Virus record (IMG/VR): IMGVR_UViG_3300042923_000569
Coordinates: 186,001 to 250,000 of that record
DNA length: 64,000 nt
Strand: one strand, 5' to 3'
The position numbers and the translations under genes were made by a program. Below the pieces are notes generated by a model that did not search any database, was not told where the DNA came from, and saw nothing but the letters and a program-made list of their open reading frames with translations. Positions 34,682-52,121 of the stretch are shown piece after piece; the stretch's first letter is position 1; every line of letters starts with the position of its first letter.

Positions 34682-34758
34682 TTGACAGGCCACCAGCACT
34701 AAGGCATAATTAACACACAGACGGCGAAACGTCTTTGACCCATAGGGTGCGGAGCTAT
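34682..34758 (+). ncRNA. promoter-hairpin-CCCATAGGGTGC unit 1 (Chi in promoter spacer)
   Basis: TTGACA-17-CATAAT; AGACG-GCGAAA-CGTCT; motif at 34739-34750; no ORF downstream. Confidence 0.55.
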
Positions 34759-34795
34759 ATAAAAAATAAAAGTACTATCCAATAGATAGATCTAT

Positions 34796-34865
34796 GCACC
34801 CTATGGGCTTAGTGGCTGTATCTGCCAATGAGATAAGTATAGCAAAAAGGGCTGACCGAAGTCAA
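34796..34865 (-). ncRNA. promoter-hairpin-CCCATAGGGTGC unit 2
   Basis: TTGACT-18-TATACT; TGGC-AGATACA-GCCA; motif at 34796-34807. Confidence 0.55.
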
Positions 34866-34873
34866 CCCCTTTT
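34844..34873 (-). terminator. UUCG terminator with an embedded -35 box
   Basis: GGGGTTGAC-TTCG-GTCAGCCC-TTTTT. Confidence 0.7.
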
Positions 34874-34889
34874 ATGTAATTCTTTTTGG

Positions 34890-35060
34890 TTATGCTGGCT
34901 GGTGATCGTGACGGCCTTTAGTGTAGGCGTCCTCTAATTCTTTACGTTGCCAGGTATCGAGTGAGTTAAACAAAAGGCGGTTATCATTATCAACCGGGCG
35001 GTTGTTGGTTCCTAATTCGTACCAACGTACTTTCAACATTTCTAAATCTACTTGAACCAT
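34890..35060 (-). CDS. 56-aa protein, paralogue of 35156..35365
   Basis: MVQVDLEMLKVRWY...LFNSL...ELEDAYTKG; below the ORF-track cutoff; AAGGA RBS. Confidence 0.65.
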   Translation of the reverse strand: MVQVDLEMLKVRWYELGTNNRPVDNDNRLLFNSLDTWQRKELEDAYTKGRHDHQPA

Positions 35061-35155
35061 TTTGTACTATCCTTATGGACTCATTGTAACGATTATATAA
35101 TGTGGGTTATACTAAGTCAACCCTATTGATATTATTTTTTATTATGACTGGAATT

Positions 35156-35365
35156 TTAGAATGTCTTTACTGTTGGTAGTACTGTTGATTGCATCCACGT
35201 TTCTGATTCATCGTTGACGCCGTACAGATAGGCTTTCTTTAGTTCAGCCTGGATGTGGGATGGAAGGGAATCGAATAGTTCTTTGTCTTTCCCAATGATT
35301 GGATTTCCTGCAACTGCCTGCTTGTACCAACGGATTTTTAAAGCTTCGACTTGACTGTTTTGCAT
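35156..35365 (-). CDS. small early protein
   Basis: LKIRWY...LFDSL...ELKKAYLYG. Confidence 0.7.
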   Translation of the reverse strand: MQNSQVEALKIRWYKQAVAGNPIIGKDKELFDSLPSHIQAELKKAYLYGVNDESETWMQSTVLPTVKTF

Positions 35366-35533
35366 TGTTGGCCTACACCTTTCTTTGTTTTGTTAAGAAC
35401 ATCTTATCGGATTCCTCTTAATCTGTCAACTACCTTGACGAATTTTATTTTATGGTCTACCGTCAGGCTTAGTTGAGATATAAAAAAAGAGGTTGACAAT
35501 TGCCAACCTCTGTGAATCTAAACGTGTAATAGG

Positions 35534-35878
35534 TTAAACGCTGTATGTTTCGATCTGATGCTGCTTGATCGCATTGCGTTGTACTGCATCCAATTTATTA
35601 AACGCTGGCGATCCGTATGCAGGTTCGATCTGAGTCCAGTTTTCCAGGTTGATAGGTTGCCCGTATGCGATAGCCTGAAGCATACGCATAATGCGACGGT
35701 TCTGGATATCACGGATTTCCCGATCCGTTTTATCTTCATCTGACAACAGAGAAGATTCCAGCTTGAAGCGGCGACCATTGTAATCTTGTCCAGCGATTAC
35801 ATATTCAGTACTGTTATTTTTACCCGGCGACGTCATTACAAACAAGTTCATCTTCATGTAATTATCCTCCATAAACAA
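35534..35878 (-). CDS. hypothetical early protein
   Basis: GGAGG RBS; consensus promoter upstream. Confidence 0.7.
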   Translation of the reverse strand: MFMEDNYMKMNLFVMTSPGKNNSTEYVIAGQDYNGRRFKLESSLLSDEDKTDREIRDIQNRRIMRMLQAIAYGQPINLENWTQIEPAYGSPAFNKLDAVQRNAIKQHQIETYSV

Positions 35879-35887
35879 TATAATATG

Positions 35888-35921
35888 ATTATAGGCTAAG
35901 GGCTGACGGTTGTCAACCCTT
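35888..35921 (-). promoter_or_regulatory. consensus sigma70 promoter fused to a hairpin
   Basis: TTGACA (35911-16)-17-TATAAT (35888-93); -35 lies in the stem AGGGTTGAC/GTCAGCCCT. Confidence 0.8.
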
Positions 35922-35937
35922 TTTTTATATTTTAAAC

Positions 35938-36840
35938 TTAAAAATCGAGAAGTTCTTCAGGTTCGGCGTTTTTCAGTGCCAGCCTCTGATCTACCAGGTT
36001 CATCGCCATTTGCCAGAGTGAGCTATTCAACACGATGTTTTTATCAATGTTGGTGATAGCACGGCTGGTGCGTTTGCGTCCTGTTTCTGGATTGAAGCCT
36101 GACTGCCCGCCTTGCATCAAATGCTGTTGAACCGTATTAAAAGTACTATACAGGGAATTATCGTATTTGTCAGTACTATTTAAGCCTTTATGTGATAAAA
36201 GTGAACGCGGCTGGAATACGGCGTTTGTGAAATCACCGTTAAGCGGCATACCTTCTTTTAACACATACGCGGCAATGGCGAATGAATCACGTTCTGAAAT
36301 GTTCAGATCAATCTGTTTCATTTCTTCTTTATAACGTTCAATATCATCAAAGTCTTTTACTACAGTGTAAACACCTTCGATAACATCATCCATAACGCCT
36401 TTGCCTTTCGTGCCATTACCTTTGTGATAGATTTTAGTATTGTGTGACATATCACCCATTACTAAACCATTAGCACAAACAAAGCGAAATTGTCCCGCCA
36501 TTAACTGGTAAGCACTTGTACCATCATTGGCATTCACCAAAATGATTTCGTTTGCTTCACCTTCAACCTTACCAGGCTGACGGAAACGGATCATATGTTT
36601 AGTATAATCACGTTTGGTAGTATCGCGTACTTTTGCCTGTATCGCGTACATAGGAAAATAGTTTTCTTGTGCCAGGCGATCAACAATGTCAATCGTTGCC
36701 ACTGGTGCAAATCTTGATGACCGGCTTTCGTGCCCTTCAACTGCGAAGATTGAAGGAACCACTTCTAACAGTTCAGTACGGTTCAATGGACGGTTATCTT
36801 TAAGGGCAAAGCCGTTGATTCCTTGATACATTTTGTTCAT
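35938..36840 (-). CDS. DUF932/DUF945 family protein
   Basis: PSIFA.E.HESRS.RF, KHMIRFR, EIILVNANDGTSAYQLMAG.FRFVCANGLV. Confidence 0.85.
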   Translation of the reverse strand: MNKMYQGINGFALKDNRPLNRTELLEVVPSIFAVEGHESRSSRFAPVATIDIVDRLAQENYFPMYAIQAKVRDTTKRDYTKHMIRFRQPGKVEGEANEIILVNANDGTSAYQLMAGQFRFVCANGLVMGDMSHNTKIYHKGNGTKGKGVMDDVIEGVYTVVKDFDDIERYKEEMKQIDLNISERDSFAIAAYVLKEGMPLNGDFTNAVFQPRSLLSHKGLNSTDKYDNSLYSTFNTVQQHLMQGGQSGFNPETGRKRTSRAITNIDKNIVLNSSLWQMAMNLVDQRLALKNAEPEELLDF

Positions 36841-36910
36841 GGGATAGCCTCTAAGCATTAAGTTTTTAAATTATAATATGCTAAACTTTAATTGTCTAGC
36901 ACATTTGAGA

Positions 36911-37108
36911 TTATTTTTTATTCAGTTCAATTGATAAAGCATCAAACTCTTTCTGTTGAGTACTGGTAAGATCCACCAGCCAACTTACAGAAACCTCTAC
37001 ACGATAGCCATAATCAATCGCATAGATTGTGTTATCCAGAATCAGAGGCTGAATCGAGGGAAACTTTTCAGCTACCGCTGTATTGATGTTCAGTACTTTG
37101 CACCCCAT
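36911..37108 (-). CDS. small early protein
   Basis: own promoter cassette upstream. Confidence 0.6.
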   Translation of the reverse strand: MGCKVLNINTAVAEKFPSIQPLILDNTIYAIDYGYRVEVSVSWLVDLTSTQQKEFDALSIELNKK

Positions 37109-37230
37109 TTCTTCAACCCCTGTTCTGTTTCGATGTAGTAATAATAGTACTTTTATAAGTTAAACGCAAGTACTTTTTAAATTAAAAGTATAATTATTTG
37201 AAATTATTTTATTAGTACTGCTACAATACA

Positions 37231-37300
37231 GCACCCCAATGGGTTAGTAGCTGTATCTGCCAATGAGATAAGTATAGCAAAAAGGGCTGACCGAAGTCAA
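37231..37300 (-). ncRNA. promoter-hairpin-motif unit 3 (variant CCCATTGGGGTGC)
   Basis: TTGACT-18-TATACT; near-copy of unit 2. Confidence 0.5.
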
Positions 37301-37323
37301 CCCCTTTATTAAGAATTTTGGAT

Positions 37324-37902
37324 TTAAATGTAAGTTACTGAATGGTCAGTTTCTTCGAAATCAATATCATTTGCAATGATTGATTCCTTGACATTTTCGT
37401 CAGAAATCAGGTCATAATAACATTTGTCCAGGTCGAAGTAGTACGCATCGCCAGCGGCTTTAATGTACGCGTCAATCTCTAATTGCAATTTGTCATAAAG
37501 AGATTGCTGTTTTGGTGAAAGGTCATTTTGCCAATCACCATCCATTTCCGCTGAAGTAGTATTTGAATGGTAGTAGCGACTTGAACCACGAACCACTTTA
37601 CAAGAAATATCGTTGCCCTTGATCAGTTCATGCAACAGGCGATAATGTGACCAGTGTTTTGCTGCACGTAAAAACTTTTCAATGTCAACGTTATCAGCGG
37701 TAAAACTTGCACCATCGCCCTGGCTGCAAAAGCCGGAGTACTGAGATTCTACATCTTCAAAGCCAACGGCTTTCAGTTTATCATGATGTTCAGCGGTTAC
37801 GTGTTCGCACCAACCATCATAATCAACGTTAATATCTCTGTGCTTGTCAAGTGCTTTGGCCTGTTGCTGTGCGTTCAGTTCGTTGAATTTCATGATGTTC
37901 AT
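37324..37902 (-). CDS. conserved phage/plasmid hypothetical protein
   Basis: YSGFCSQGDGASF and YYHSNT motifs. Confidence 0.75.
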   Translation of the reverse strand: MNIMKFNELNAQQQAKALDKHRDINVDYDGWCEHVTAEHHDKLKAVGFEDVESQYSGFCSQGDGASFTADNVDIEKFLRAAKHWSHYRLLHELIKGNDISCKVVRGSSRYYHSNTTSAEMDGDWQNDLSPKQQSLYDKLQLEIDAYIKAAGDAYYFDLDKCYYDLISDENVKESIIANDIDFEETDHSVTYI

Positions 37903-38100
37903 CTCAATTAAAATGGTTAGGAACTATTCCTTAACCTTGAATACATTATACATTACTACGTTAAACTTGCAAGTACTTTCTAGTAGATAATCAGGTAAAT
38001 TATGAAGATAATTACTATCAGTACTTTTACCATTTTTTCCATCTGCATGGCTACTATATGTGCTAGGCTCTTAGTACTGTATAGTACTACATAACGTTTC

Positions 38101-38325
38101 TTAGTGGACATACCTCATTGCCCCAAATGTAAGAGGGGTATTAACAACACTAACTTTTGTGATAATAAGGTTAGGTTCAATCCCGTTAAAGTAGCGAAGT
38201 GCGAACACTGTATCGCCCATTGAATAGTCTTCACGTAAACAAATAGGTTGCAGTACTTCAGACATTTGTCTATCTTCATCTGAAGGTTCTTCAAAAATAA
38301 TCTTCTTTAAAAAGTCTTCAATCAT
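38101..38325 (-). CDS. small early protein
   Basis: AAGGA RBS. Confidence 0.6.
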   Translation of the reverse strand: MIEDFLKKIIFEEPSDEDRQMSEVLQPICLREDYSMGDTVFALRYFNGIEPNLIITKVSVVNTPLTFGAMRYVH

Positions 38326-38435
38326 TACCGTATTCCTTTATGTTGTGGTATGAAACTAATCTTAGTACAACTTATTAGTACTTGCAAGAATTATTTTAGT
38401 ACAATATATAACCTATAACTAACAAATATATCTAT

Positions 38436-38504
38436 GCACCCTATGGGTTAGTAGCGGTATCTGCCAATGAGATAAGTATAGCAAAAGGGGCTAACCTAAG
38501 TCAA
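38436..38504 (-). ncRNA. promoter-hairpin-CCCATAGGGTGC unit 4
   Basis: TTGACT-18-TATACT; motif at 38436-38447. Confidence 0.5.
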
Positions 38505-38518
38505 CCCCTTGTTTAAAA

Positions 38519-38860
38519 TTATTTGCAAGTATAGATAACTTTAGCGGGAACATACTTACCAGTACTTTCATCCGGGATCGCAGTTTCCATAGTATATTTG
38601 TTATGGATGCGGTCTGAAATGATCCGGCCTGTATCGTTTCGGTAATCGTTACCGTCTTTCCAGAATTCCAGGGCATGACCGTGACTAGTCAAAGTAACTT
38701 TTGGTTGAGTAAGTTCAATCGTTGAACCTACAGACATAGGAACATTACTTGCGACTGTGTTCCCATTAACGATCAGTGTTTGAGTACTACAGGTTAGTAC
38801 TTCAGCTTGAACGGACAGTGACAGTACTGATAAGATACCAAAGGCGATTAACTTTTTCAT
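38519..38860 (-). CDS. secreted/periplasmic protein
   Basis: MKKLIAFGILSVLSLSVQA signal peptide; one Cys pair. Confidence 0.7.
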   Translation of the reverse strand: MKKLIAFGILSVLSLSVQAEVLTCSTQTLIVNGNTVASNVPMSVGSTIELTQPKVTLTSHGHALEFWKDGNDYRNDTGRIISDRIHNKYTMETAIPDESTGKYVPAKVIYTCK

Positions 38861-38929
38861 TTTATAATCCTGTTCAGTTGATATAGTTATTATAATAAAA
38901 AAGGCTGACAAACGTCAACCTCTTTTTGA

Positions 38930-39454
38930 TTATTCTATAGTACTATTTAAAATTGCGTTCTGTATGTATTCCATAATTTCATATTGGTCTACATTGTCTT
39001 TTGATGTAATTTCTTGCATTGCACGATATGCCGCGAAGACGCCAGCTTTAAATTTAGCTGGTGGCACTGCTTTGAGAGAATTCACTATACTAGATAAGTA
39101 ACCTGGATTATTAGCAAAGATTCTCGCTAAGTCCTGGGTTAGAGCTTGTACTTTTGTTCTACTGTTATGTACTGGATCTTTCGGAGCTTCTTCTGGTTCA
39201 GCGGTAGGAGTTGAACCCGGCATAAGCCCTAATGATTTAAAGTACTTTAACTTTTCTTCAGGCTTCATTTTTGACGTATCGATACCCTGAGAAGGCATTG
39301 TGTTTAATTTGCCTTGCATTCCTGTACCCTGATTACGTTTACCTTTGCTACCTTGTCCGGCGTCGTGACTGTTTGCACTGCGTTCACTGTTCGACCACTT
39401 ATCAGAGTGTCCTGAAAGTGTTGCACCGTTTTTACTTCTGAATGTTCCAGGCAT
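38930..39454 (-). CDS. hypothetical protein
   Basis: start moved to MPGTFRS. Confidence 0.65.
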   Translation of the reverse strand: MPGTFRSKNGATLSGHSDKWSNSERSANSHDAGQGSKGKRNQGTGMQGKLNTMPSQGIDTSKMKPEEKLKYFKSLGLMPGSTPTAEPEEAPKDPVHNSRTKVQALTQDLARIFANNPGYLSSIVNSLKAVPPAKFKAGVFAAYRAMQEITSKDNVDQYEIMEYIQNAILNSTIE

Positions 39455-39511
39455 AATAAAAAATCCCCAATATGTTATAAAGTTTATTATAATCATATTT
39501 AGGGATTATGT

Positions 39512-39754
39512 CTACCGCCGTTCAACGAATTTGTTATACTGTTCATGCGTCATTAGGTTTAGTACTTCATCCCGGATCACAATGCGTTCATTGTGTGATA
39601 CGTCAAGTACTTTAAACAATCCACAACCTAACTTCCTGGCATGAATAGATCCGCTTTTGTATCCGGTCACAACCTTGATCGCTTTGTCAAGTATCTTTGT
39701 TTGTACTTTAAAGTGCAATCGAAGTTGTATATCTTGAATCATTATCCGCTTCAT
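39512..39754 (-). CDS. ParE/RelE-fold-like small protein
   Basis: ARKL...LDV....RI......LMTHEQYNK resembles stand-alone ParE-like phage proteins. Confidence 0.4.
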   Translation of the reverse strand: MKRIMIQDIQLRLHFKVQTKILDKAIKVVTGYKSGSIHARKLGCGLFKVLDVSHNERIVIRDEVLNLMTHEQYNKFVERR

Positions 39755-39798
39755 AGATACACCTTCTAAGGGGCTTGTCAAGCCCCCTACGATTGATT

Positions 39799-40263
39799 TT
39801 AAGCACTTTTCGCAATGGACTGAGCCAGACGGATAGGCACAAGTGAGCGGCGATACATGACGCGTACACGCTTATCATTAGGGGTAGTTAGTACTTGTTC
39901 ACCGATGATCCCTGCGATAATCTTACGTACTTCTTTCACTGCAACGTGAGCAACTTCTACAACTTTCTTTTCAAAGTTGTTTGCATTCAGGAAGGAAATA
40001 CGATCCTTAATTGCTGGTGCTGGTTTAGCAACATCAACAGCTTTAAGAGCGGCAGCCAGGCTTGCAGTAGTTTCTGAATGAATCTCTACTGAATGCTCTT
40101 TCGCTGGAATTGCTGGTGCAACTTCAACCGCTGCAACTACTTCAGACAGTACAGCCCAACGTTCACCGGCTGCTGCATCTTTACCAAAATCTTTGACTTT
40201 GCCGCCGTTCTCTGAAGCGAAGTTACGAGCCAGGGTGCGTGATGCGAAGAATTCAGTTCTCAT
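39799..40263 (-). CDS. hypothetical early protein
   Basis: FASRTLAR...GKVKDFG...GERW. Confidence 0.75.
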   Translation of the reverse strand: MRTEFFASRTLARNFASENGGKVKDFGKDAAAGERWAVLSEVVAAVEVAPAIPAKEHSVEIHSETTASLAAALKAVDVAKPAPAIKDRISFLNANNFEKKVVEVAHVAVKEVRKIIAGIIGEQVLTTPNDKRVRVMYRRSLVPIRLAQSIAKSA

Positions 40264-40338
40264 TTTTTCAATCTCTCTTGTGTGGTTGATGTGATAATTA
40301 TAAGTTCTTTCGGGTTTTAGTGCAAGTACTTTTTAAAT

Positions 40339-40671
40339 TTAATTTTTAATACATTCTACACTGTAATCGATTGTTGTATCATCAGTTGGTTTTACATAAA
40401 ACATCTTTTCTTCTTCCGTCTGGTATCCAGTAAGTGTCACTTTCATACCATCAAAATAAGAATCAGTTTTGATACGGTTTACTACTTCAGGCGATACTGT
40501 CAAGTTATAATTAACAGGATAGTAATCCTCTCTGGCACCACTTACTTTACAAACATAATTAGGATTAGTAAATGATTTAAATTTATTATATCCTTCTTTA
40601 AGTACTGGATGAATAACAAAACCACATACTGAGCTTACTAATACAATTGCAATCAAAGACGAAGTTTTCAT
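40339..40671 (-). CDS. membrane-anchored/secreted protein
   Basis: N-terminal hydrophobic segment. Confidence 0.65.
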   Translation of the reverse strand: MKTSSLIAIVLVSSVCGFVIHPVLKEGYNKFKSFTNPNYVCKVSGAREDYYPVNYNLTVSPEVVNRIKTDSYFDGMKVTLTGYQTEEEKMFYVKPTDDTTIDYSVECIKN

Positions 40672-40743
40672 TATTATATTCCAGTTCAGTTTATATTATA
40701 AAGTACTCTGATTATATAAAGTACTTTGACTAATATCCACTAA

Positions 40744-41190: not shown

Positions 41191-41335
41191 TTTCTTATCC
41201 CCTGTACGATTCGCCGTGAACCGTTTCGATGTAGTAATAATAGTACTTCTGAATGTTTAATGCAAGTACTTTTTAAATCGAAAGTATAATTTTTGATGTA
41301 AAAAAAAAGCCTCGACAATGCGAGGCTTTTGTGGG

Positions 41336-42190: not shown

Positions 42191-42200
42191 TGAAAACCTC

Positions 42201-42449: not shown

Positions 42450-42451
42450 TT

Positions 42452-43110: not shown

Positions 43111-43190
43111 TTGACAGACCACCAGCAATAGGGCATAATTATCACATAGACAGCGAAATGTCTTATCCCATAGGGTGCGGAGTTGTACCT
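43111..43190 (+). ncRNA. promoter-hairpin-CCCATAGGGTGC unit 5 (Chi in spacer)
   Basis: TTGACA-17-CATAAT; AGACA-GCGAAA-TGTCT; motif at 43167-43178. Confidence 0.55.
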
Positions 43191-43249: not shown

Positions 43250-43549
43250 CTATTTCCAGATATACTTGGTTACGCCGTAATATCCGCGATGCAGTACTAC
43301 CACATCATTACTTGTCATAACATGGCTTAGGGTAATGTCTACCAGTGTTTCGCCATTAAACAACGCCATCCAGCCATAACCAGTATCAACATATACATGA
43401 TGATCGCCATCGCTTTCAACTAATTGCCATTCAAACGGTTTACCGTTCTTATTCCACAATGCCAGATCTTCGCACGGTTCTGTTACCAGGCGATGCGGAA
43501 GATCGGACATATAATCAAAACGTTTTTCCAACTGTTCGATGATTGACAT
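43250..43549 (-). CDS. small early protein
   Basis: start moved to MSIIEQ after the AATTGAGAG leader. Confidence 0.65.
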   Translation of the reverse strand: MSIIEQLEKRFDYMSDLPHRLVTEPCEDLALWNKNGKPFEWQLVESDGDHHVYVDTGYGWMALFNGETLVDITLSHVMTSNDVVVLHRGYYGVTKYIWK

Positions 43550-43625
43550 ATGAATTCTCTCAATTAAAGTAACTACATTATAAAGTACTATCATAATAAT
43601 TACAATAGTACTTTTGATAATGTTT

Positions 43626-44577: not shown

Positions 44578-44621
44578 TTTATAACCTCCTGTTATGGGGG
44601 ATAGTTAATCCCCCGGTGTGG

Positions 44622-45520: not shown

Positions 45521-45630
45521 TTTTCTTTCTCCGTCTCGTTTCGATATAAGTAAGTATACTCTCTTTTAGTTTATGTACAAGTACTTTTTAAATTAAAAGT
45601 ATAATTATATTTTTTAACGGGCACACTTCA

Positions 45631-45698
45631 GCACCCTAATGGGTTTGACCGTTTCGCCGGATTAAGATAAGTATACTAAAAGGGCTGACTTGCGTCAA
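45631..45698 (-). ncRNA. promoter-hairpin-motif unit 6 (variant CCCATTAGGGTGC)
   Basis: TTGACG-17-TATACT; CCG-GCGAAA-CGG. Confidence 0.5.
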
Positions 45699-45711
45699 CC
45701 CCTTTTTTCAA

Positions 45712-46011: not shown

Positions 46012-46094
46012 TTTGTTTTCTCTCAATTAAAAGTAAGTCAGTAACTACATTATAAAGTACTCGCAGTAATAAGCAAGTACTTTTGATAATGTTT

Positions 46095-46439
46095 TTACGA
46101 TTCGTCTGCCATACTATCCACCAGCTCATAAACCGGCTTAAGTAATGCATCAAACGCCGCATGATCACCGCTAGCAGTATTAGCGATTAAATCAATACCA
46201 TCATTGCCGTTATTATAGATAAGCAGTATAGAACCGATTTGATAAGGATCATCTTTCTTTAATACGCGGAGCCAGTCCAGTCCAGTACTGTTAAGGGCTT
46301 CTTTGATTGTGCTAACATCACTTGAACGGCGTAACACGAACTCCTCACCATCAAAAATGCTAACCTCATAGCCACCAGCAAAAACAGTACTCAAAATACA
46401 ATCAATGATTCTGTTTTCGTTTTCCAGGAGTGCAGCCAT
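46095..46439 (-). CDS. small early protein
   Basis: GYEVSIFDGEE...STGLD pattern. Confidence 0.7.
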   Translation of the reverse strand: MAALLENENRIIDCILSTVFAGGYEVSIFDGEEFVLRRSSDVSTIKEALNSTGLDWLRVLKKDDPYQIGSILLIYNNGNDGIDLIANTASGDHAAFDALLKPVYELVDSMADES

Positions 46440-46526
46440 AATATCCTCTCAATTAAAAGTAATTCGTTTGCAGTAACTACATTATAAAGTACTCGCTAGT
46501 TAATGCAAGTACTTTTGATAATGTTT

Positions 46527-46919
46527 TTACTTATTCAGATAACGATGAAAGTAATACATAGGGGAATGTTGGCGATCTTTCGCTGGCGGTACTTTGTACT
46601 TACAAAGCTCATAAACCTTTTGCATCATCTGGATATCAGACGCTGGCAATGCATAGTACTCAGTCTTTTTAACATCAATCGCGAAGTGTTGAAGTAGTAA
46701 AGCCCTGGCTGATTCAGCACTTAAGCCAGTGTGAAGAATAGCGGCTTTTTCTTCAAATGCTTTAAGCATTTGCTCGTTAGGCAAATTCTTACGTGGTAAC
46801 GCATTGATAGTTGCCTTATGGAATTTCTTACCATTGGCTAACAGCAATTCATGTACTGACATTTCTTTGCCATTGAACAAGAAACAAAAACCGTTTTCAT
46901 AACCTCTGACTTCTAACAT
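46527..46919 (-). CDS. small early protein
   Basis: AATTGAGAGG leader. Confidence 0.7.
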   Translation of the reverse strand: MLEVRGYENGFCFLFNGKEMSVHELLLANGKKFHKATINALPRKNLPNEQMLKAFEEKAAILHTGLSAESARALLLQHFAIDVKKTEYYALPASDIQMMQKVYELCKYKVPPAKDRQHSPMYYFHRYLNK

Positions 46920-46925
46920 AGTAAT

Positions 46926-47348
46926 CCTCTCAATTAAAATTAACTACTCAATAAGTTTATTATATAGTACTCGCTTGTTATTGCAAGTACTATCGAACTA
47001 CTTATTATGATTATCATTGTACAGGCGATCACATAATCGCCCATGATAAACCCGCCCATTCTTTAAACGTTTACCCAAAGGCATAAACCATTTAAGATGG
47101 AAACCAGTAAGAAAGATTATATCTTTCATTCGGAAACTTCTACAGTCCAGCCTTTATAGGCGTCGATGTAATTGATCCAGTCCTGGTCATTCCAACGGGC
47201 AGTAGTTACACCAGGAGCTTTAAACTTGTAATGTCCAGCTTTATATGCTTCCATCTTAGTCATGTATCACCTCTCAATTAAAATTAACTACTCAATAAGT
47301 TTATTATATAGTACTCGCTTGTTATTGCAAGTACTATCGAACTACTTA
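46926..47348. repeat. 79-bp perfect direct repeat of a promoter/RBS cassette (46926-47004 and 47270-47348)
   Basis: identical CCTCTCAATTAAAATT...AGTACTATCGAACTACTTA copies. Confidence 0.85.
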
Positions 47349-47747
47349 CAGATCTTTTTTACGCTTCACATCATTGCAGTTATCATAGTAAGGAATCGAT
47401 AACATATTACACAACGTGTACAGGGTACGCACACGAACATTGTCAAAATCAACAAAGTTCCCCTGTACTGCTTCGCGGAAAATAGTATAACCAGTGTATT
47501 CATACTGATTACCATGCCCAGGCATAAACTCATTGCGAACTACATCGATCCAGACCTGTTCACCTTCAGGCCGGTTATAGTGGTTAGCGTTTAACTCGTT
47601 TGCCTTTTCCACATCAACCAGGCAGGCGACATAAGTACTGTGATACGTTACGCCTAATGAATCAGTCCAGCGATTACCAGTAAGAGTAATGCCCTTGATA
47701 TCTTCCAGGGTTAAACGTGCGATTGTGATTCTAGTATCTTTGTCCAT
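47346..47747 (-). CDS. small early protein
   Basis: RW.D..G.TYHS...G.QYEYT...V.RKKDL pattern. Confidence 0.7.
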   Translation of the reverse strand: MDKDTRITIARLTLEDIKGITLTGNRWTDSLGVTYHSTYVACLVDVEKANELNANHYNRPEGEQVWIDVVRNEFMPGHGNQYEYTGYTIFREAVQGNFVDFDNVRVRTLYTLCNMLSIPYYDNCNDVKRKKDL

Positions 47748-47874
47748 CTGGTAAACCTCTCAGTTAAAATTGTGTATCTCGTTTCGATATAAAAGATTAT
47801 ACGCGATTCTAGTTTATGTGCAAGTACTTTTTAAAATGAATTTATAATTATATTTTTTTAATGGGTATAACTCT

Positions 47875-47942
47875 GTACCCTATGGGCTAAGCCATTTCTC
47901 TGGCGTATGAGTACTATAACAAAAGAGGCTAACTTTCGTCAA
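47875..47942 (-). ncRNA. promoter-hairpin-motif unit 7 (CCCATAGGGTAC)
   Basis: TTGACG-18-TATAGT; GCCA-GAGAAA-TGGC. Confidence 0.5.
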
Positions 47943-47959
47943 CCCCTTTTGATAATTAA

Positions 47960-48415
47960 TTATAGATACTTTTCAGGGATAGAATCTTGCTGAATGATTT
48001 GCTTTTCAGCCGCGAGTTCTGTTACAAACTCTTTCAGCTTTTTAAAGTACTTGTCATAACCCGCGATTACTTTATCAGCATCGCCTTTAATCTTGCGTAC
48101 TGCAATCTTGCGGCTTTCAGCGTACATATGCGGCTTTTCAGTAATGCAAGTTACCCAGGCACCGTCAAATTCAACTTCCAGATCCTGGAGTTCAACTTCT
48201 GAATCATTAAACTTGATTCCTTTGTGAATGTATGACCGGAAAGTTACTGGATCATTCATTCTGATTTTTGCGGAAACATCATTAATGTCGCCAATCAAAC
48301 CGCAGAAGATAGCAATACCGCCACCTAGTGCTAGTGGGCTGATTCGAATACTTCCATTAGGAAAGTACTTCAGAAATGATTCTGTTACTGCTGCCTGGAG
48401 TTCGTTGGCTTTCAT
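47960..48415 (-). CDS. hypothetical early protein
   Basis: start moved to MKANE. Confidence 0.7.
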   Translation of the reverse strand: MKANELQAAVTESFLKYFPNGSIRISPLALGGGIAIFCGLIGDINDVSAKIRMNDPVTFRSYIHKGIKFNDSEVELQDLEVEFDGAWVTCITEKPHMYAESRKIAVRKIKGDADKVIAGYDKYFKKLKEFVTELAAEKQIIQQDSIPEKYL

Positions 48416-48497
48416 GTTCTGTTCTCTCAATTAAAAAGTTACTATATAACTAATTATAAAGTACTCGCTAGTTAATGCAAGTACTTTTGATAATTAA

Positions 48498-48941
48498 TTA
48501 TTCAACAGTTCCCGCCAGGATCTCTCCTACGCGTACCATTTCATAACGATCAACGATTGATAAAGATAGCTTAGTATCTTTTTGGCGTACACTATACCAG
48601 GTATCACCTTCAAACACATAACGGGTAATGTTTTTGTTTGCGATAAGGAACATCAACCATGATTTAGTAGTTAGTGGCTCTGTGCCAGTTTCACCACGAT
48701 CACGCCCATAAGCTACAGTATAGCCAGGAACCTTTTTATTGAAGCTGTGACCTTCTGGACACTCGATAGATTTATCCAGTACTGACAGATCACCCAGGGC
48801 GATTAGTGCCTTTGCACGTTCTGCATCGTTGTAATGCTCAACTAACATTCTACCAGTGTGACCGATATAGCCATCATAGTTTACAGATGACCAGGTAACA
48901 TGTTCGCCGTCTTTGATTGCAATAACTGCTGGAGTACCCAT
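48498..48941 (-). CDS. conserved phage early protein
   Basis: MGT...YDGY..HTG..L..HY...LI.LGDLSVL...YGRDRGE. Confidence 0.75.
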   Translation of the reverse strand: MGTPAVIAIKDGEHVTWSSVNYDGYIGHTGRMLVEHYNDAERAKALIALGDLSVLDKSIECPEGHSFNKKVPGYTVAYGRDRGETGTEPLTTKSWLMFLIANKNITRYVFEGDTWYSVRQKDTKLSLSIVDRYEMVRVGEILAGTVE

Positions 48942-49097
48942 TTTTAAATCCTCTCAATTAAAAGTAACATCGTCTCGTTTCGATATAGGTAATTATATAG
49001 TACTGGTAATCGAAAGCAAGTACTTTTTAAAATAAAAGTATAATTAAGAATCAAAAATAAATTTGCATCTAAAGAAAAATGATGATACGATGTTTAT

Positions 49098-49192
49098 GCG
49101 GCGAAAATGTGAGGTTCGCCGCAAGTCCAACGAATGATAACGCATTGTATTACTTTATAGGATAGCTATGGGTTTGCTATCCTTTTTTTTTT
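49098..49192 (+). ncRNA. candidate ~95-nt small RNA
   Basis: TTGCAT-17-TACGAT (extended -10) promoter; 8-bp 5' hairpin; unpaired core; AGGATAGC/GCTATCCT terminator plus a long T run; no ORF. Confidence 0.6.
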
Positions 49193-49207
49193 ATTTTCGA
49201 AAAGGTA

Positions 49208-49282
49208 TTGACTCCACCAGCCAAATAACCGATAATCACATCAAGACGGCGAAACGTCCTTTCCCATAGGGTGCGGAGCTAT
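49208..49282 (+). ncRNA. promoter-hairpin-CCCATAGGGTGC unit 8 (Chi in spacer)
   Basis: TTGACT-17-GATAAT; GACG-GCGAAA-CGTC; motif at 49263-49274. Confidence 0.55.
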
Positions 49283-49319
49283 GTCTTTAAAGTACTAATT
49301 TTCTTACGGGTATTCCTCT

Positions 49320-49387
49320 GCACCCTATGGGCTACGCCTTTGTCTCGGCTTGTATGTATTATTGCATTTTTCGGGGATTGAAGTCAA
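49320..49387 (-). ncRNA. promoter-hairpin-CCCATAGGGTGC unit 9
   Basis: TTGACT-18-AATAAT; GCC-GAGACAAA-GGC; motif at 49320-49331. Confidence 0.5.
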
Positions 49388-49405
49388 CCCCCGATTTGTA
49401 AAGAT

Positions 49406-49762
49406 TTATTCTTCTTGCGTTACACATTCCAGGCGGTAAGTACTGAAATGTTTACGGAATAAATCGCAAGCCTGATCGCCGTTTTCCGCTTGCATTATAA
49501 TCGAACCTTCTCGATTATTTTTAATATCGAAATATGTTACTATCCAGCCACGCGTTTTGATTTCAGATAGTGGCAAGTGAATTGATCCACCGCTGGTTAA
49601 TTGACCTTCAGGATCTTTGTTGATTGCTTCCTGGTCGATAGTCAGTGAATAGTTTTCACCATCTACAACGTGGAACAATTCAACAATCGGATCGATGTTT
49701 CCACGTTTGTTTGCGATGCGTTCCAGTGTAGAAAGTACTCCGCGAAGTTCTGATAATCTCAT
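49406..49762 (-). CDS. small early protein
   Basis: 118-aa ORF. Confidence 0.7.
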   Translation of the reverse strand: MRLSELRGVLSTLERIANKRGNIDPIVELFHVVDGENYSLTIDQEAINKDPEGQLTSGGSIHLPLSEIKTRGWIVTYFDIKNNREGSIIMQAENGDQACDLFRKHFSTYRLECVTQEE

Positions 49763-49801
49763 TTAAAATTTACTCTCGTTTGTTGGTGTGTGGTAATAGT
49801 A

Positions 49802-50203
49802 CTATACTACTTCAGAAGTAGCAAGAATATTTTCAAAGTATTCGATTAAATCACAAAGTAACTTGTAGCGAAGTTTACCAGGTTCAGAATCCATTACGCA
49901 AAGGTTACGCTGATTCCAATGTAAGTTAACAGCCCGATTAACATCATTATCAGTTAATTGCATTTCAACCGGATAACCGCAGTGTAAACCCATTTCCACA
50001 AATACAGGCTGCAAGTATTCGTGATCGATCCCGGTAACTTCACTGTTAGGAGTGTGGGCGAATACGTGCCAGCAGATACCATGCTGTCTGGTTAGGTTGA
50101 ATGATTCACCGTTGATAGTGGTGTAAGTAACATCACGATCTAAACAGTCTTTCATTGCTGTTAGTACTTTCAGGACTAAAACTGCCTGCTCTGTACGTTT
50201 CAT
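49802..50203 (-). CDS. small early protein
   Basis: start moved to MKRTEQ; GIC...YPV...R..L pattern. Confidence 0.7.
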   Translation of the reverse strand: MKRTEQAVLVLKVLTAMKDCLDRDVTYTTINGESFNLTRQHGICWHVFAHTPNSEVTGIDHEYLQPVFVEMGLHCGYPVEMQLTDNDVNRAVNLHWNQRNLCVMDSEPGKLRYKLLCDLIEYFENILATSEVV

Positions 50204-50337
50204 TGTATTGCCTCTCAATTAAAATTTGTTTTGTTTCGATACAGGGAAGTTTACACTACTCGAAAGTTTATACAAGTACTTTTATAAAATATTTTTAAAC
50301 TCTCTGTAACGCATTCTAAGCGATTTAAAGTACTGCC

Positions 50338-50619
50338 TTACACCTTCAACGATTGAACGTTAAAAGCCCCGCTAATAGGCTTACACGCAAGATCTATAGC
50401 ATAGTTCGCTTTCTTGTGGATTATGTACATACACGAATCAAACTGATGATTATACGGCATATCATAAACCCGGCGTTGTACAAGTTCACCACTAACAACA
50501 AAGGCCAGGTAGCCGCTGAAGGTACAACTACGCGGGCCAGCACTGGTCATCGTTTTAGCAATACGGGTACGGGGATCAATCAGGGACGAAATAGGCTTAA
50601 GGTTAAGATTGTTATTCAT
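50338..50619 (-). CDS. small early protein
   Basis: start moved to MNNNL. Confidence 0.6.
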   Translation of the reverse strand: MNNNLNLKPISSLIDPRTRIAKTMTSAGPRSCTFSGYLAFVVSGELVQRRVYDMPYNHQFDSCMYIIHKKANYAIDLACKPISGAFNVQSLKV

Positions 50620-50766
50620 GGCGTTTAGTCTCAATTAAAAGGTAGAATCTAAAACGCTCTGTAATCAATTCTAAGCGTTTCTAATAGTACTTTAAGCGAA
50701 TGTATCACAGTACTATTAGAAATGCTTAGCGGGGCATATAGCCCCGCCATGCTGTATTACTTTGTA

Positions 50767-51411
50767 TTACGCGGCGGTATCTTCAGAGGCTACGCGGAAA
50801 GTTTCGATGAAAGTTTCGCGGTCCATGTTTTTAGAAGCTACCAGATCTTTGAGTTCCTGGCTCATGTTGCCTTTTTCCGGCATATCGTACTGTTTGCCAT
50901 CGACTTCAACAGTGACGCGGTTGTATGCGTTGTTGCTGCCGGTAAGTGACGCTTTGATCTTCTTACCTACACCAGCAACCGCCGCCTGAGCTACTGCCAG
51001 ATCCACGCCACCAGCTACCAGAAGTTTGAGCATTTTTTCACGTTCTTCTTTCGCTTTCTCTTCCGCTTCAGCGTTCAGACGTTCACGTTCTGCCTGAGCT
51101 TTAACGCGGGCTTCTTCGCGGGCCGCTTCAGCACGTGCGGCTTCTTCTTTCTGGTACTGTACAGCAGCCGGGATTGCTTTAGACGCTGCAACCAGAATTT
51201 TAGAAATCACGTCAGTGTCAGTTGTTTTATCAACAAAGTACTGAGCCAGGTTAGTCGCAACAGTGTTTACGTGATCAGCAATGTCTGCTTTGTGCTGAGC
51301 CAGTACTTCTTTACTGTGTGTCTTACCTTCTTCCGGTGCCGCCAGGGTAGGAGCCTGAGCGAACAGGATTGAATTCAGTGTTACTTTAGGAGCTTTAGAA
51401 GTGTTAGTCAT
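50767..51411 (-). CDS. Ala/Glu/Lys-rich coiled-coil protein with a small C-terminal domain
   Basis: 214 aa; codon use suggests high expression; first gene of the leftward early region. Confidence 0.8.
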   Translation of the reverse strand: MTNTSKAPKVTLNSILFAQAPTLAAPEEGKTHSKEVLAQHKADIADHVNTVATNLAQYFVDKTTDTDVISKILVAASKAIPAAVQYQKEEAARAEAAREEARVKAQAERERLNAEAEEKAKEEREKMLKLLVAGGVDLAVAQAAVAGVGKKIKASLTGSNNAYNRVTVEVDGKQYDMPEKGNMSQELKDLVASKNMDRETFIETFRVASEDTAA

Positions 51412-51670
51412 GATATTACCCTCGAATTTTTTAAGTTAATTTGTTTGGCCTGATTGTTTCGGCTTGATTAAAATTTAAACTACTTGTTTCTTTCAGTCAA
51501 CTACTATTTTCAACTTTCAAGAAACTTTTTTTCTTTCTATCGTCTGGAGCATTTCGCCCTTTCGATAACCAACATCTTACACCATCCTTTCTAACTAGCA
51601 AGTACTTTTTAAAAACTTTTTTTCGTTCTATCCAAAAGAGAGTTTCTATCTTCAGGACTTGCTAGCCAGG

Positions 51671-51683
51671 TTGTTAAAGAGCG
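51671..51683 (-). promoter_or_regulatory. boxA antitermination element
   Basis: CGCTCTTTAACAA on the minus strand, ~20 nt past a TTGCAG-16-TACTAT promoter. Confidence 0.65.
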
Positions 51684-51941
51684 GTGTTCCGTGTTGATGT
51701 GGTAATAGTACACTAACCATAAAACTCTGCAAGCACTTTCTTATAAAAACTTATAACTTTTTTCATTCGTCGTTTTTCTTCCTTTATACGCGTAAAGAAA
51801 CCCACAACACATAGGAAGCATTTACAGCCCTTTAAAGTACTAATCTAAGTGTTTACCAGGCGTAATCCTCCAGCCTCTTATAGTGCGTCCTATGCGTTCC
51901 TATATAGAAGAAACTATTTTCAATCTTTTTAAAGAAAATGC

Positions 51942-52012
51942 TTGCTTCTCTGATTCAGTACTGTATAATCTTTTATATCGAAGCGAAATTCGTTATCCCA
52001 TAGGGTGCGGAG
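51942..52012 (+). ncRNA. promoter-hairpin-CCCATAGGGTGC unit 10
   Basis: TTGCTT-16-TATAAT; CGAA-GCGAAA-TTCG; motif at 51997-52008. Confidence 0.55.
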
Positions 52013-52045
52013 ATCCGTCTATTGCTTTTTTACTTTTTCCTGGGT

Positions 52046-52121
52046 ATAGCTCCGCACCCTATGGGAAAGGCCATTTCGCTGGCTTGTACGTATTATTGCA
52101 TAATTCGATCAGTACTGTCAA
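52046..52121 (-). ncRNA. promoter-hairpin-CCCATAGGGTGC unit 11
   Basis: TTGACA-18-AATAAT; GCCA-GCGAAA-TGGC; motif at 52054-52065. Confidence 0.55.

What the first reader, a model, noticed from the sequence alone, without database searches (positions are those of the whole stretch)
34682..52121. Eleven-copy non-coding unit: sigma70 promoter, covarying hairpin, then CCCATAGGGTGC
Seen: 11 units (plus strand 34682, 43111, 49208, 51942; minus strand 34865, 37300, 38504, 45698, 47942, 49387, 52121). Each has a near-consensus -35/-10, then a short stem whose sequence varies while pairing is kept (AGACG/CGTCT, AGACA/TGTCT, GACG/CGTC, CGAA/TTCG, GCCA/TGGC, CCG/CGG, TGGC/GCCA) around a purine-rich loop (GCGAAA in six copies). 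The motif CCCATAGGGTGC (exact in 8 of 11) starts 26-28 nt after the -10 box. In several copies GGGTG(C) can pair again with a downstream TACCC/GTGCCC/GTACCT, using G-U pairs that work only on the transcribed strand. No ORF follows directly, and four copies point against gene flow. Inference: a multicopy family of ~50-nt structured early RNAs, or promoter-coupled cis sites, that I cannot match to a known family. Possible roles: decoy RNAs against host defence or RNA-binding proteins, HK022 put-like RNA polymerase-modifying RNAs, or transcription-primed R-loop origins. This is the best candidate for an undescribed system here.
Basis: partly seen in the sequence, partly recalled or inferred. Interest (0 to 1): 0.9.

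Follow-up and report, generated by a model that had tools for sequence, protein, structure and literature searches.

The report
Conserved promoter-coupled RNA module, jumbo phages
Eleven strong early promoters in this jumbo phage each begin their transcript with the same small folded RNA element instead of a gene; the element recurs in the terminal repeats of the whole Rak2-like phage group, I found no description of it, and its function is still unknown.

Summary
The window comes from a new Mimasvirus-like jumbo phage (about 77% identity to GAP32).

It carries exactly 11 units between 34.7 and 52.1 kb. Each unit has these parts, in order:
- a sigma70-type promoter;
- a 5'-proximal hairpin (HP1) with a variable stem and a purine-rich loop;
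- the near-invariant CCCA-NN-GGGUGC;
- a YRYCY segment that pairs back to GGGUG (HP2), mostly through G-U pairs.

A covariance model finds 78 units in ten phage genomes. BLAST finds 330 places in 61 Rak2-like phage records, with hits under annotated direct terminal repeats. HP1 shows compensatory changes in all four pairs. HP2 is paired in 96% of cells against 25-48% in slid controls. CCC/GGG can form a competing mini-hairpin.

No Rfam family matches, no conserved ORF follows, and I found no description in the literature. The upstream half of six units is a known kind of composite terminator-promoter (PeSL). The downstream RNA module is not part of that.

Function is unresolved. My best guess (about 0.35) is a multicopy early RNA handle that binds a conserved factor. 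The rivals are cis antitermination, antisense control at the three convergent pairs, a DNA operator, and R-loop origins.

The parts
34682..34762 (+). Unit 1, antisense to gene flow and the plus arm of convergent pair A. TTGACA-17-CATAAT, HP1 AGACG/GCGAAA/CGTCT, CCCATAGGGTGC at 34739-34750. The HP2 3' strand is degenerate (TATAA).
   Evidence: (61 bits)
34784..34865 (-). Unit 2, sense and the minus arm of pair A. PeSL-type terminator hairpin containing the -35 (GGGGTTGACTTCGGTCAGCCC, then a T run), TATACT, HP1 TGGC/AGATACA/GCCA, motif at 34807-34796, HP2 GGGTG/TATCT.
   Evidence: the hairpin is followed by a U run on both strands
37219..37300 (-). Unit 3, a sense single. PeSL promoter, HP1 TGGC/AGATACA/GCTA, variant motif CCCATTGGGGTGC with a 4-nt loop. 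It is the weakest model match.
   Evidence: 37.9 bits
38424..38504 (-). Unit 4, a sense single. PeSL promoter, HP1 TGGC/AGATACC/GCTA, motif at 38447-38436.
43111..43190 (+). Unit 5, an antisense single. TTGACA-17-CATAAT, HP1 AGACA/GCGAAA/TGTCT, motif at 43167-43178, HP2 GGGTGC/GTACCT. It fires into the 3' end of the minus-strand gene 43250-43552 and stands back to back with a UP-type promoter for gene 42998. Antisense units occupy the syntenic place in GAP32, CBB, BF and fHe-Yen9-04.
   Evidence: (78 bits)
45619..45698 (-). Unit 6, a sense single. PeSL promoter, HP1 CCG/GCGAAA/CGG, motif CCCATTAGGGTGC, HP2 GGGTGC/GTGCCC.
47863..47942 (-). Unit 7, a sense single. PeSL promoter, HP1 GCCA/GAGAAA/TGGC, motif CCCATAGGGTAC. 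The G-to-A change in the motif still pairs with U in HP2 (GGGTA/TACCC).
   Evidence: (z -3.0)
49208..49286 (+). Unit 8, antisense and the plus arm of pair B. TTGACT-17-GATAAT, HP1 GACG/GCGAAA/CGTC, motif at 49263-49274.
49308..49387 (-). Unit 9, sense and the minus arm of pair B. PeSL hairpin with the -35, TGC-AATAAT, HP1 GCC/GAGACAAA/GGC, motif at 49331-49320, HP2 GGGTG/TACCC.
51942..52020 (+). Unit 10, antisense and the plus arm of pair C. UP-type promoter (CTTGCT ... TATAAT), HP1 TCGAA/GCGAAA/TTCG, motif at 51997-52008.
52042..52121 (-). Unit 11, sense and the minus arm of pair C, and the first promoter of the leftward early region. TTGACA-18-AATAAT, HP1 GCCA/GCGAAA/TGGC, motif at 52065-52054, HP2 GGGTG/TACCC.
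51671..51683 (-). Context, not part of a unit. rrn-type boxA CGCTCTTTAACAA in the leader of the UP-type promoter that follows pair C.

Best explanation
Each unit is a host-sigma70 early promoter whose transcript begins with a structured RNA module of about 45-50 nt rather than a ribosome-binding site.

The module has these parts:
- one to four unpaired bases;
- a 5'-terminal hairpin (HP1), with a free stem sequence and a purine-rich 6-8-nt loop;
- a 4-6-nt spacer;
- the near-invariant CCCA-NN-GGGUGC;
- an 8-nt loop;
- a YRYCY segment.

The GGG can pair backwards with CCC (a mini-hairpin of about -2.3 kcal/mol) or forwards with YRYCY (HP2, mean about -1 kcal/mol). The conserved core is therefore a weak two-state element.

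My reading is that HP1 protects the 5' end, and that the core is a sequence-specific binding handle for a factor conserved across Enterobacterales or across these phages. The units are made in about 10 copies per terminal repeat. By analogy with phage T5, that repeat may be the first DNA to enter the cell. In this reading the RNA titrates or recruits the factor, and does not serve as the 5' UTR of the next gene.

In pairs A and B, the antisense copies would also give discrete antisense RNAs of about 155-160 nt, ending at the partner's bidirectional terminator hairpin.

Shown: the anatomy, copy number, conservation, strand-specific pairing, confinement to the terminal repeat in CBB, and the absence of ORFs.
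Inferred: transcription in vivo, the 3' ends, the existence and identity of the factor, and action in trans.
For: - The model finds 11 of 11 units in the window and none elsewhere. It finds 68 units in seven phages and 10 more in RaK2, Munch and PBECO4. BLAST finds 330 places in 61 Rak2-like records.
- HP1: 4 of 4 pairs show changes on both sides. HP2: 96.4% of cells are paired, with only GU/GC and UA/UG alternation, against 25-48% when the partner is slid. In 65 of 78 units HP2 is fully paired, and 22 of 32 distinct strand combinations pair fully. Three of the five commonest HP2 pairs are G-U, so the complementary strand cannot form the helix.
- CCC/GGG mini-hairpin: the loop varies in sequence and length (AUA, ACA, AUU, AGA, ACC, UAUA, AUUA, AUUG). 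There are two double changes of CCU with AGG.
- The motif always sits in the same orientation and at the same distance from a promoter, and it never occurs without one.
- Ordinary early promoters in the same region reach SD+ATG in about 30 nt and lack the module. Sense units are instead followed about 60 nt later by a separate UP-type promoter that serves the gene. The unit therefore looks like a self-contained cassette.
- About one third of units are antisense. Orientation relative to genes therefore seems not to matter much, and copy number is high.
- All 12 CBB units lie inside the 22-kb terminal repeat and none lie in the 18 kb outside it. Records that hold both repeat copies have 10-16 places, against 4-6 in records with one copy.
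- Precedent: the distant relative PA5oct has two highly expressed ncRNAs in its terminal repeat (PMC7318152).
Against: - No expression data exist for any of these phages.
- Sense units have no terminator, so a discrete small RNA would need processing.
- The two hairpins are thermodynamically marginal, and single-sequence folds are not exceptional (z about -1).
- No candidate binding protein was found among the neighbours or elsewhere in the window.
- The near-invariance of CCCA..GGGTGC could equally reflect a DNA-binding protein.
- GGA, the CsrA-type loop motif, is present in only 58% of HP2 loops, so the obvious known sponge target does not fit.
Confidence: 0.35

Rival explanations
1. Cis-acting processive antitermination or anti-Rho site, working like lambda nut, rrn boxB-boxA, HK022 put or RfaH ops. 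The nascent module, or the non-template-strand mini-hairpin CCC-NNN-GGG, modifies the polymerase that has just left the promoter. That polymerase then reads through the many terminator hairpins and long untranslated stretches of the early region.
For: - The module sits at a fixed short distance after the promoter.
- A hairpin with a purine-rich loop followed by a conserved linear element matches the rrn order boxB-boxA.
- The region is full of terminator hairpins.
- The phage does use antitermination signals: a bona fide rrn-type boxA lies after the first pair and is conserved in BF and GAP32.
- The module occurs only at promoters followed by at least 100 nt of untranslated RNA.
- The motif shares TAGnGTG with ops (recalled from memory).
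Against: - One third of the units point against all genes.
- Units recur after almost every terminator, which is redundant if the polymerase is made termination-resistant.
- Each gene has its own promoter after the unit.
- The units contain no boxA.
- No N-like arginine-rich protein was found in the window.
- tblastn finds no RfaH/NusG homologue in any Rak2-like phage.
- The ops core GGTAG is not met.
Confidence: 0.2
2. Antisense or convergent-transcription switch, working like ColE1 RNA I/RNA II, P22 sar or lambda OOP. The antisense units make short RNAs fully complementary to the 5' leader of the facing sense unit (in pairs) or to the 3' end of the upstream mRNA (the single unit 43111). This causes interference, RNase III cleavage or early shut-off. 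The shared module provides kissing loops and stability.
For: - The window has three convergent pairs, and the motif offset is constant at 68 nt in pairs of the window, GAP32 and CBB; model hits abut in the same way in BF and fHe-Yen9-04.
- The start sites are about 115 nt apart, as in ColE1.
- Transcripts that cross a pair fold into a stem of at least 12 bp with z of -4.3 to -5.4.
- The plus units of pairs A and B run into a hairpin followed by a U run.
- The antisense single is syntenic in five phages.
Against: - Most units (about two thirds) are sense singles with no antisense partner, yet they carry the same conserved core.
- The gene downstream of a pair has its own promoter beyond the antisense unit, so it would escape control.
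- The protein that the single antisense unit faces is not conserved between the window and GAP32 (BLASTP E 3.3).
Confidence: 0.15
3. DNA-level operator or roadblock. CCCA-NN-GGGTGC at about +22 to +33 is bound by a phage (or host) DNA-binding protein that blocks or pauses this subset of early promoters, for example to shut them off.
For: - The sequence, not only the pairing, is near-invariant: CC, A, GG, T and C are invariant in 44 units.
- The site is partly palindromic (CCC...GGG).
- It keeps a fixed distance and orientation relative to the promoter.
- In pairs, two sites lie at a fixed spacing.
Against: - The YRYCY segment varies exactly as wobble pairing to GGGUG predicts, which a double-stranded DNA site does not explain.
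- The loop between CCC and GGG varies in length (3-4 nt) and shows double CCU/AGG changes.
- A symmetric protein site would not need this covariation.
- The promoters concerned drive no ORF, so there is no obvious product to regulate.
Confidence: 0.12
4. Transcription-primed R-loop replication origins or recombination hot spots in the terminal repeat. The G-cluster in the RNA followed by an AT-rich stretch would seed a persistent hybrid, as at T4 ori(uvsY)/ori(34) or the T7 primary origin. Alternatively, the repeats serve PeSL-like modular shuffling.
For: - The order is promoter, then GGGUGCGGAG, then 35-40 nt of AT-rich DNA.
- The units are confined to the terminal repeat.
- Different promoter types, HP1 types and partners are combined in a mosaic fashion, which suggests recombination between units.
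- PeSLs were proposed to mediate shuffling (PMC2839356, PMC4122927).
Against: - HP2 conservation implies an RNA that is free of the template.
- Ten or more origins within 18 kb is unusual.
- The AT-rich stretch is explained by the UP element of the next promoter.
- Recombination alone does not explain near-invariance across genera, or the covariation.
Confidence: 0.08

Closest known systems
PeSL (promoter-early stem-loop) cassettes of T4-type phages (Arbiol 2010, PMC2839356; Comeau 2014, PMC4122927)
   Same: - Both are composite intrinsic-terminator hairpin plus near-consensus sigma70 promoter.
- Both are repeated between small ORFs of unknown function in plastic early regions.
- Six of the 11 units start with such a cassette.
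- The same cassette occurs in 121Q directly in front of a gene.
   Different: - The PeSL definition ends at the promoter.
- The conserved part here (5' hairpin, CCCA-NN-GGGUGC, HP2) lies downstream in the transcript.
- That part also follows non-PeSL promoters (34682, 43111, 49208, 51942, 52121).
lambda nut / rrn boxB-boxA antitermination sites
   Same: - Both are promoter-proximal RNA.
- Both have a short hairpin with a purine-rich loop next to a conserved linear element.
- Both sit in a terminator-rich early region.
   Different: - The units have no boxA. The one boxA in the window lies elsewhere (51683-51671).
- HP1 loops are 6-8 nt, not GNRA-like pentaloops.
- No N-like protein was found.
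- One third of the units are antisense.
HK022 put RNA
   Same: Both have two adjacent small stem-loops transcribed immediately after early promoters, and both could act on the transcribing polymerase without an ORF.
   Different: - I could not test sequence or structure similarity, and I did not check whether Rfam holds a put model.
- put occurs at two sites per genome (recalled from memory), not about ten.
- put sites are not antisense.
RfaH ops element (GGCGGTAGnnTG, non-template strand)
   Same: - Both are a 12-nt element in the leader.
- Both can form a mini-hairpin of 9-10 nt in the exposed non-template strand.
- Both share TAGnGTG and end in TG.
   Different: - The core GGTAG is not conserved (CATAG, CACAG, CATTG).
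- No NusG-family gene was detected in these phages.
- The resemblance is recalled from memory and is only a lead.
ColE1 RNA I/RNA II, P22 sar and lambda OOP cis-antisense RNAs
   Same: The convergent promoters are about 115 nt apart and give fully complementary, hairpin-rich 5' RNAs. A short antisense RNA faces the 3' end of a gene (unit 43111).
   Different: This applies only to the antisense third of the family, and the conserved core is not needed for antisense pairing.
Multicopy protein-sponge or decoy RNAs (CsrB/CsrC; phage RNA anti-CRISPRs made of solitary repeat units)
   Same: Both consist of many copies of a short conserved hairpin motif, each strongly transcribed, with no ORF and with orientation irrelevant.
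   Different: - GGA is present in only 58% of HP2 loops.
- From memory, the module does not resemble type I-E or I-F CRISPR repeats.
- The copies are dispersed, each with its own promoter, not tandem in one RNA.
PA5oct terminal-repeat ncRNAs (PMC7318152)
   Same: Both are non-coding transcripts from the long terminal repeat of a related jumbo phage. The PA5oct RNAs are highly expressed from early infection.
   Different: There is no sequence or structure match to model R1. The PA5oct RNAs are 236 and 451 nt, in single copies.

Membership tests
PeSL (composite terminator/promoter cassette) | Stem-loop with flanking A and T runs fused to a near-consensus sigma70 early promoter | tested here: met
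   Met for units 34865, 37300, 38504, 45698, 47942 and 49387. Not met for the five other units.
PeSL (composite terminator/promoter cassette) | Located between small variable ORFs of an early or hyperplastic region | tested here: met
   The region 34-52 kb holds small minus-strand ORFs, nearly all without a Pfam domain.
PeSL (composite terminator/promoter cassette) | The cassette accounts for the repeated conserved sequence | tested here: not met
   The conserved core lies 26-28 nt downstream of the -10 box, in the transcript. It also follows other promoter types.
lambda-type nut / rrn antitermination site | boxA-like element (CGCTCTTTA / TGCTCTTTAACAA) next to the hairpin | tested here: not met
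   The only close boxA match in the window is at 51683-51671, outside any unit.
lambda-type nut / rrn antitermination site | boxB-type hairpin with a purine-rich loop | tested here: inconclusive
   HP1 has a 3-5-bp stem and a 6-8-nt purine-rich loop (GCGAAA, GAGAAA, AGAUACA). Similar hairpins also start ordinary leaders here.
lambda-type nut / rrn antitermination site | Cognate N-like arginine-rich protein | tested here: inconclusive
   None was found among about 100 window ORFs. The rest of the genome was not available.
HK022 put | Two stem-loops in the nascent RNA that make the polymerase termination-resistant in cis | not testable with these tools
   Two hairpins are present. Read-through needs transcription assays.
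RfaH ops | GGCGGTAG core on the non-template strand | tested here: not met
   The motif is CCCA-NN-GGGTGC. Only TAGnGTG is shared, and only in some copies.
RfaH ops | NusG/RfaH paralogue available to read it | tested here: not met
   tblastn of E. coli RfaH against 50,697 phage records found no Rak2-like phage among the 9 matching records. Host RfaH was not excluded experimentally.
Any Rfam family | Covariance-model match | tested here: not met
   There was no match at gathering score over the whole window. There was none over the units at E up to 5.
Cis-antisense RNA pair (ColE1 RNA I/II type) | Convergent promoters giving complementary structured 5' RNAs | tested here: met
   Met in geometry only, for pairs A, B and C. 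Regulation was not tested.
CsrB-type CsrA sponge | GGA in the loop of every repeated hairpin | tested here: not met
   GGA is present in 45 of 78 HP2 loops.
5' UTR of a small ORF | Conserved start codon and reading frame after the motif | tested here: not met
   The longest ORFs have a median of about 16 codons, and start type and position are inconsistent.

The most novel reading that the evidence does not exclude
The module is a new class of phage early RNA, delivered in about ten promoter-driven copies from the terminal repeat. In one version it reprograms the host RNA polymerase that makes it, as a factor-independent, put-like element. In the other it acts as a multicopy decoy that neutralises a conserved host RNA-binding regulator or defence sensor in the first minutes of infection. 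The CCC/GGG versus GGGUG/YRYCY toggle would be the recognition switch.
Probability: 0.25. Interest if true: 0.85.

Novelty: new variant of a known kind. Interest (0 to 1): 0.6.

Why it matters
Rak2-like jumbo phages (GAP32, CBB, 121Q, PBECO4, RaK2 and dozens of therapy candidates) use the host polymerase, and most of their early genes have no known function. None of the papers I read mapped their early transcription.

This element is the most conserved non-coding sequence in their terminal repeats, with about 330 copies in 61 genomes. It is strand-specific, and it is not in Rfam or in the papers I could search.

If it binds a host factor or modifies the polymerase, it would be a compact, easily testable handle on how these phages take over the cell from their terminal repeat. 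At the least it should be annotated, because annotated records here carry short 'hypothetical protein' ORFs over unit matches.

Tried and rejected
- tRNA or tmRNA: none in the window.
- Rfam: none at gathering score, and none over the units at E up to 5.
- IMG/VR pattern scan: 21 loci, but only GAP32 itself carries real units, so the family is rare outside isolated phages.
- PA5oct terminal-repeat ncRNAs: no match to the model.
- Small ORF or SD-ATG reading of GGAG: rejected.
- Pseudoknot between the CCC-loop and the HP2 3' strand: by eye on A2 there is no consistent covariation between the loop's middle base and the partner column.
- Conserved protein target of the single antisense unit: the facing proteins of the window and GAP32 are unrelated.
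- Trans-factor among the neighbours: Pfam and PHROGs gave Band_7, DUF932, a ParE-like domain and RCC1/Kelch, but nothing RNA-binding.
- N-like arginine-rich motif: none found.
- Phage NusG/RfaH: none found.
- CsrA sponge: GGA is not universal.
- sigma70-dependent pause at a -10-like YAGGGT: the key A is replaced by T in several copies (CCCATTGGGT), so I did not pursue it.
- Literature: the motif strings occur only in unrelated primer lists. The CBB and Sharanji genome papers do not mention the element.

Full report
IDENTITY OF THE WINDOW

Megablast places the window in the Rak2-like group of jumbo myoviruses. The closest relatives are Cronobacter phage GAP32 and Pectobacterium phage CBB (genus Mimasvirus), at about 76-78% identity over conserved genes. 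It is therefore a new species.

The stretch 34-52 kb is a run of small minus-strand ORFs. It is syntenic with the first ~18-20 kb of GAP32 and with the 22-kb direct terminal repeat (DTR) of CBB.

THE OBSERVATION

- The 12-mer CCCATAGGGTGC gives 10 matches at up to 2 mismatches. Shuffles give 1.5, and none of 100 reaches 10.
- The eleventh unit has a one-base insertion in the loop.
- Ten promoters score at least 10 of 12 in a generic sigma70 scan.
- The eleventh promoter uses the phage's own CTTGC-type -35 with a perfect TATAAT.
- A covariance model built from 44 units of five phages (A1, R1) finds exactly these 11 in the window and nothing else in 64 kb.

ANATOMY

From 5' to 3':
1. A promoter.
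2. About 7 nt to the likely start.
3. One to four unpaired bases.
4. HP1, with a 3-5-bp stem of free sequence and a 6-8-nt purine-rich loop.
5. A 4-6-nt spacer.
6. CCCA-NN-GGGUGC.
7. An 8-nt loop (CNNAGNUN; GGAG in 36% and GGA in 58% of copies).
8. YRYCY.
9. A/U-rich sequence.

In six units the -35 sits inside a hairpin flanked by an A run and a T run. This is a composite terminator-promoter of the PeSL kind described for T4-type phages (PMC2839356, PMC4122927). The same cassette stands directly before SD-ATG in phage 121Q, without the module.

Ordinary early promoters in this window also reach SD-ATG within about 30 nt. The units do not.

After every sense unit, about 60 nt from the motif start, comes a second promoter with a UP element (AAAAAGTACTTGCA, about 17 nt, TATAAT). 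That promoter serves the gene. Leaders of these second promoters also begin with a short hairpin with a purine-rich loop. HP1 is therefore probably a general 5'-end feature, and the CCCA..GGGUGC/HP2 part is what defines the family.

DISTRIBUTION

The model finds 68 units in the window, GAP32, CBB, Serratia BF, Yersinia fHe-Yen9-04, E. coli EJP2 and Erwinia Hallingskeid. It finds 10 more in RaK2, Salmonella Munch and PBECO4. BLAST with one unit finds 330 places in 61 records of the group.

Several lines tie the family to the terminal repeat:
- In CBB all 12 units lie inside the annotated DTR, and none lie in the 18 kb beyond it.
- Hits in Muenster, vB_Ec-M-J and fENko-Kae01 fall under annotated DTRs.
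- Records that contain both DTR copies have 10-16 places, against 4-6 in single-copy records.
- A convergent pair lies 1.0-1.1 kb from the record start in CBB, BF, Munch, fENko-Kae01 and BF17.

In the window a fourfold 20-bp tandem repeat lies 1 kb beyond the last pair. This may mark the terminus.

STRUCTURE EVIDENCE

These counts were made on the MAFFT alignment, which was not fitted to any structure.
- HP1 shows changes on both sides in all four pairs.
- HP2 is paired in 96.4% of cells, with only GU/GC and UA/UG alternation.
- Sliding the 3' partner by 1-3 columns drops pairing to 25-48%. The same holds on 68 units.
- HP2 is fully paired in 65 of 78 units.
- Of 32 distinct 5'/3' strand combinations, 22 pair fully, where chance gives about 3% each.
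- In most copies three of the five HP2 pairs are G-U. The helix can therefore exist only on the transcribed strand, as RNA.

RNAalifold on its own prefers HP1 plus a CCC/GGG mini-hairpin. Its loop varies in sequence and in length (3-4 nt), and two units carry the double change CCU/AGG.

The two structures share the GGG, so they exclude each other. Both are weak: about -2.3 kcal/mol for the mini-hairpin and a mean of about -1.0 kcal/mol for HP2. Single-sequence folding energies are unremarkable. The near-invariance of C, C, A, G, G, U and C, without swaps, argues for sequence-specific recognition and not only for a fold.

ORIENTATION AND PAIRS

About two thirds of units point with the genes and one third against them.

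The window has three convergent pairs. The motif-to-motif offset is 68 nt in the window, in three GAP32 pairs and in three CBB pairs. Model hits abut in the same way in BF and fHe-Yen9-04.

Transcripts that cross a pair fold into a stem of at least 12 bp, with z of -4.3 to -5.4. The plus-strand units of pairs A and B then meet the partner's PeSL hairpin, which is followed by a U run on that strand too. That would give RNAs of about 155-160 nt.

The single antisense unit (43111) faces the 3' end of a gene and stands back to back with the next gene's promoter. Antisense units occupy the syntenic place in four relatives, but the protein it faces is not conserved.

WHAT IT IS NOT

- Not a tRNA.
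- Not an Rfam family.
- Not a 5' UTR of a conserved small ORF.
- Not related to the PA5oct DTR ncRNAs.
- Not a boxA-type nut site. A genuine rrn-type boxA does exist in this phage, but elsewhere.
- Not an ops site by sequence.

No RfaH/NusG homologue is detectable in any Rak2-like phage. No N-like protein or RNA-binding domain was found in the window. I found no description of the motif in the searchable literature or in the CBB and Sharanji genome papers.

MECHANISM

The data show a strand-specific, promoter-coupled RNA module that is conserved across several genera. They do not show what it does.

I favour (0.35) a self-contained early RNA handle that binds a conserved factor and works through copy number. 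This reading accounts for:
- the strong private promoter;
- the absence of an ORF;
- the separate promoter for the next gene;
- the indifference to orientation;
- the roughly ten copies;
- the DTR location;
- the sequence invariance.

Its weaknesses are that sense units lack a terminator and that no partner was found.

The rivals, with their confidences, are:
- Cis antitermination (0.2). The fixed promoter-proximal position, the terminator-rich context and the phage's own boxA favour it. The antisense copies, the redundancy and the lack of a reader argue against it.
- Antisense control (0.15). It explains the pairs but not the majority of units.
- A DNA operator (0.12). It explains the invariance but not the wobble pattern.
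- R-loop origins or recombination sites (0.08).

VERDICT

Part of each unit belongs to a known kind (PeSL). The conserved module is new, and its function is open.

I score interest at 0.6. A phage RNA specialist would want to test it, but nothing yet shows an unprecedented mechanism.

Noticed in passing
window 51671-51683 (minus strand); BF L003 about 1400; GAP32 L001, downstream of the pair at 14853/14921: An rrn-type boxA (CGCTCTTTAACAA, one mismatch to E. coli TGCTCTTTAACAA) lies about 20 nt after a UP-type promoter, just inside the first convergent pair. It is conserved in position in BF and GAP32. This suggests the phage recruits the host Nus antitermination complex for its first early transcript.
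   Followed up: partly
whole window: AGTACT occurs 257 times against 21.5 expected (12-fold), and GTAC 603 times against 211. The sites are spread evenly, and part of the excess comes from early promoters that contain two GTACT. GCGC occurs 0 times against 67 expected, which is complete avoidance.
   Followed up: partly
window 33.5-52.8 kb, minus strand: More than 20 copies of a second early promoter type were found (AAAAGTACTTGCA, about 17 nt, TATAAT, often with an AATTATACTTTTAATTTAAAAA UP element). Their leaders start with a short hairpin such as AUCGAAACGA. These are probably the 'RpoD-like promoters with UP element' of the CBB paper.
   Followed up: partly
window 53076-53155, and 52255-52350: A fourfold 20-bp tandem repeat (AGTACTGTTAYSATRYTCTT) lies 1 kb beyond the last pair, and there is a 48-bp direct repeat with TAGCC/CTAAACGTCTAGA motifs. 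In relatives the first pair lies about 1 kb from the physical genome end, so this may be the terminus or DTR boundary region. Genes switch strand here.
   Followed up: no
window 51412-51940 and 52130-52700: These are long stretches without convincing ORFs around the first pair. They contain several promoters and conserved blocks shared with BF and GAP32, for example ACGTATAAAGGAA. They could hold further non-coding RNAs.
   Followed up: no
window about 32 kb: GC content steps from 0.31-0.35 to about 0.39 at 32 kb and stays higher to about 52 kb. This stretch roughly coincides with the unit-bearing region, which is syntenic with the CBB DTR.
   Followed up: no
window 33.3-51.4 kb ORFs: One early protein carries a ParE-like toxin domain (E 7.6e-11). 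Others match Band_7/SPFH and DUF932. The plus-strand genes at 53.4-57.1 kb are RCC1/Kelch repeat proteins. I did not identify which ORF carries the ParE-like domain.
   Followed up: no
window 49150-49200 (plus strand): A strong plus-strand intrinsic terminator (GGATAGC...GCTATCC followed by 11 T) stands directly upstream of the antisense promoter at 49208. This implies that appreciable antisense transcription arrives from the left.
   Followed up: no
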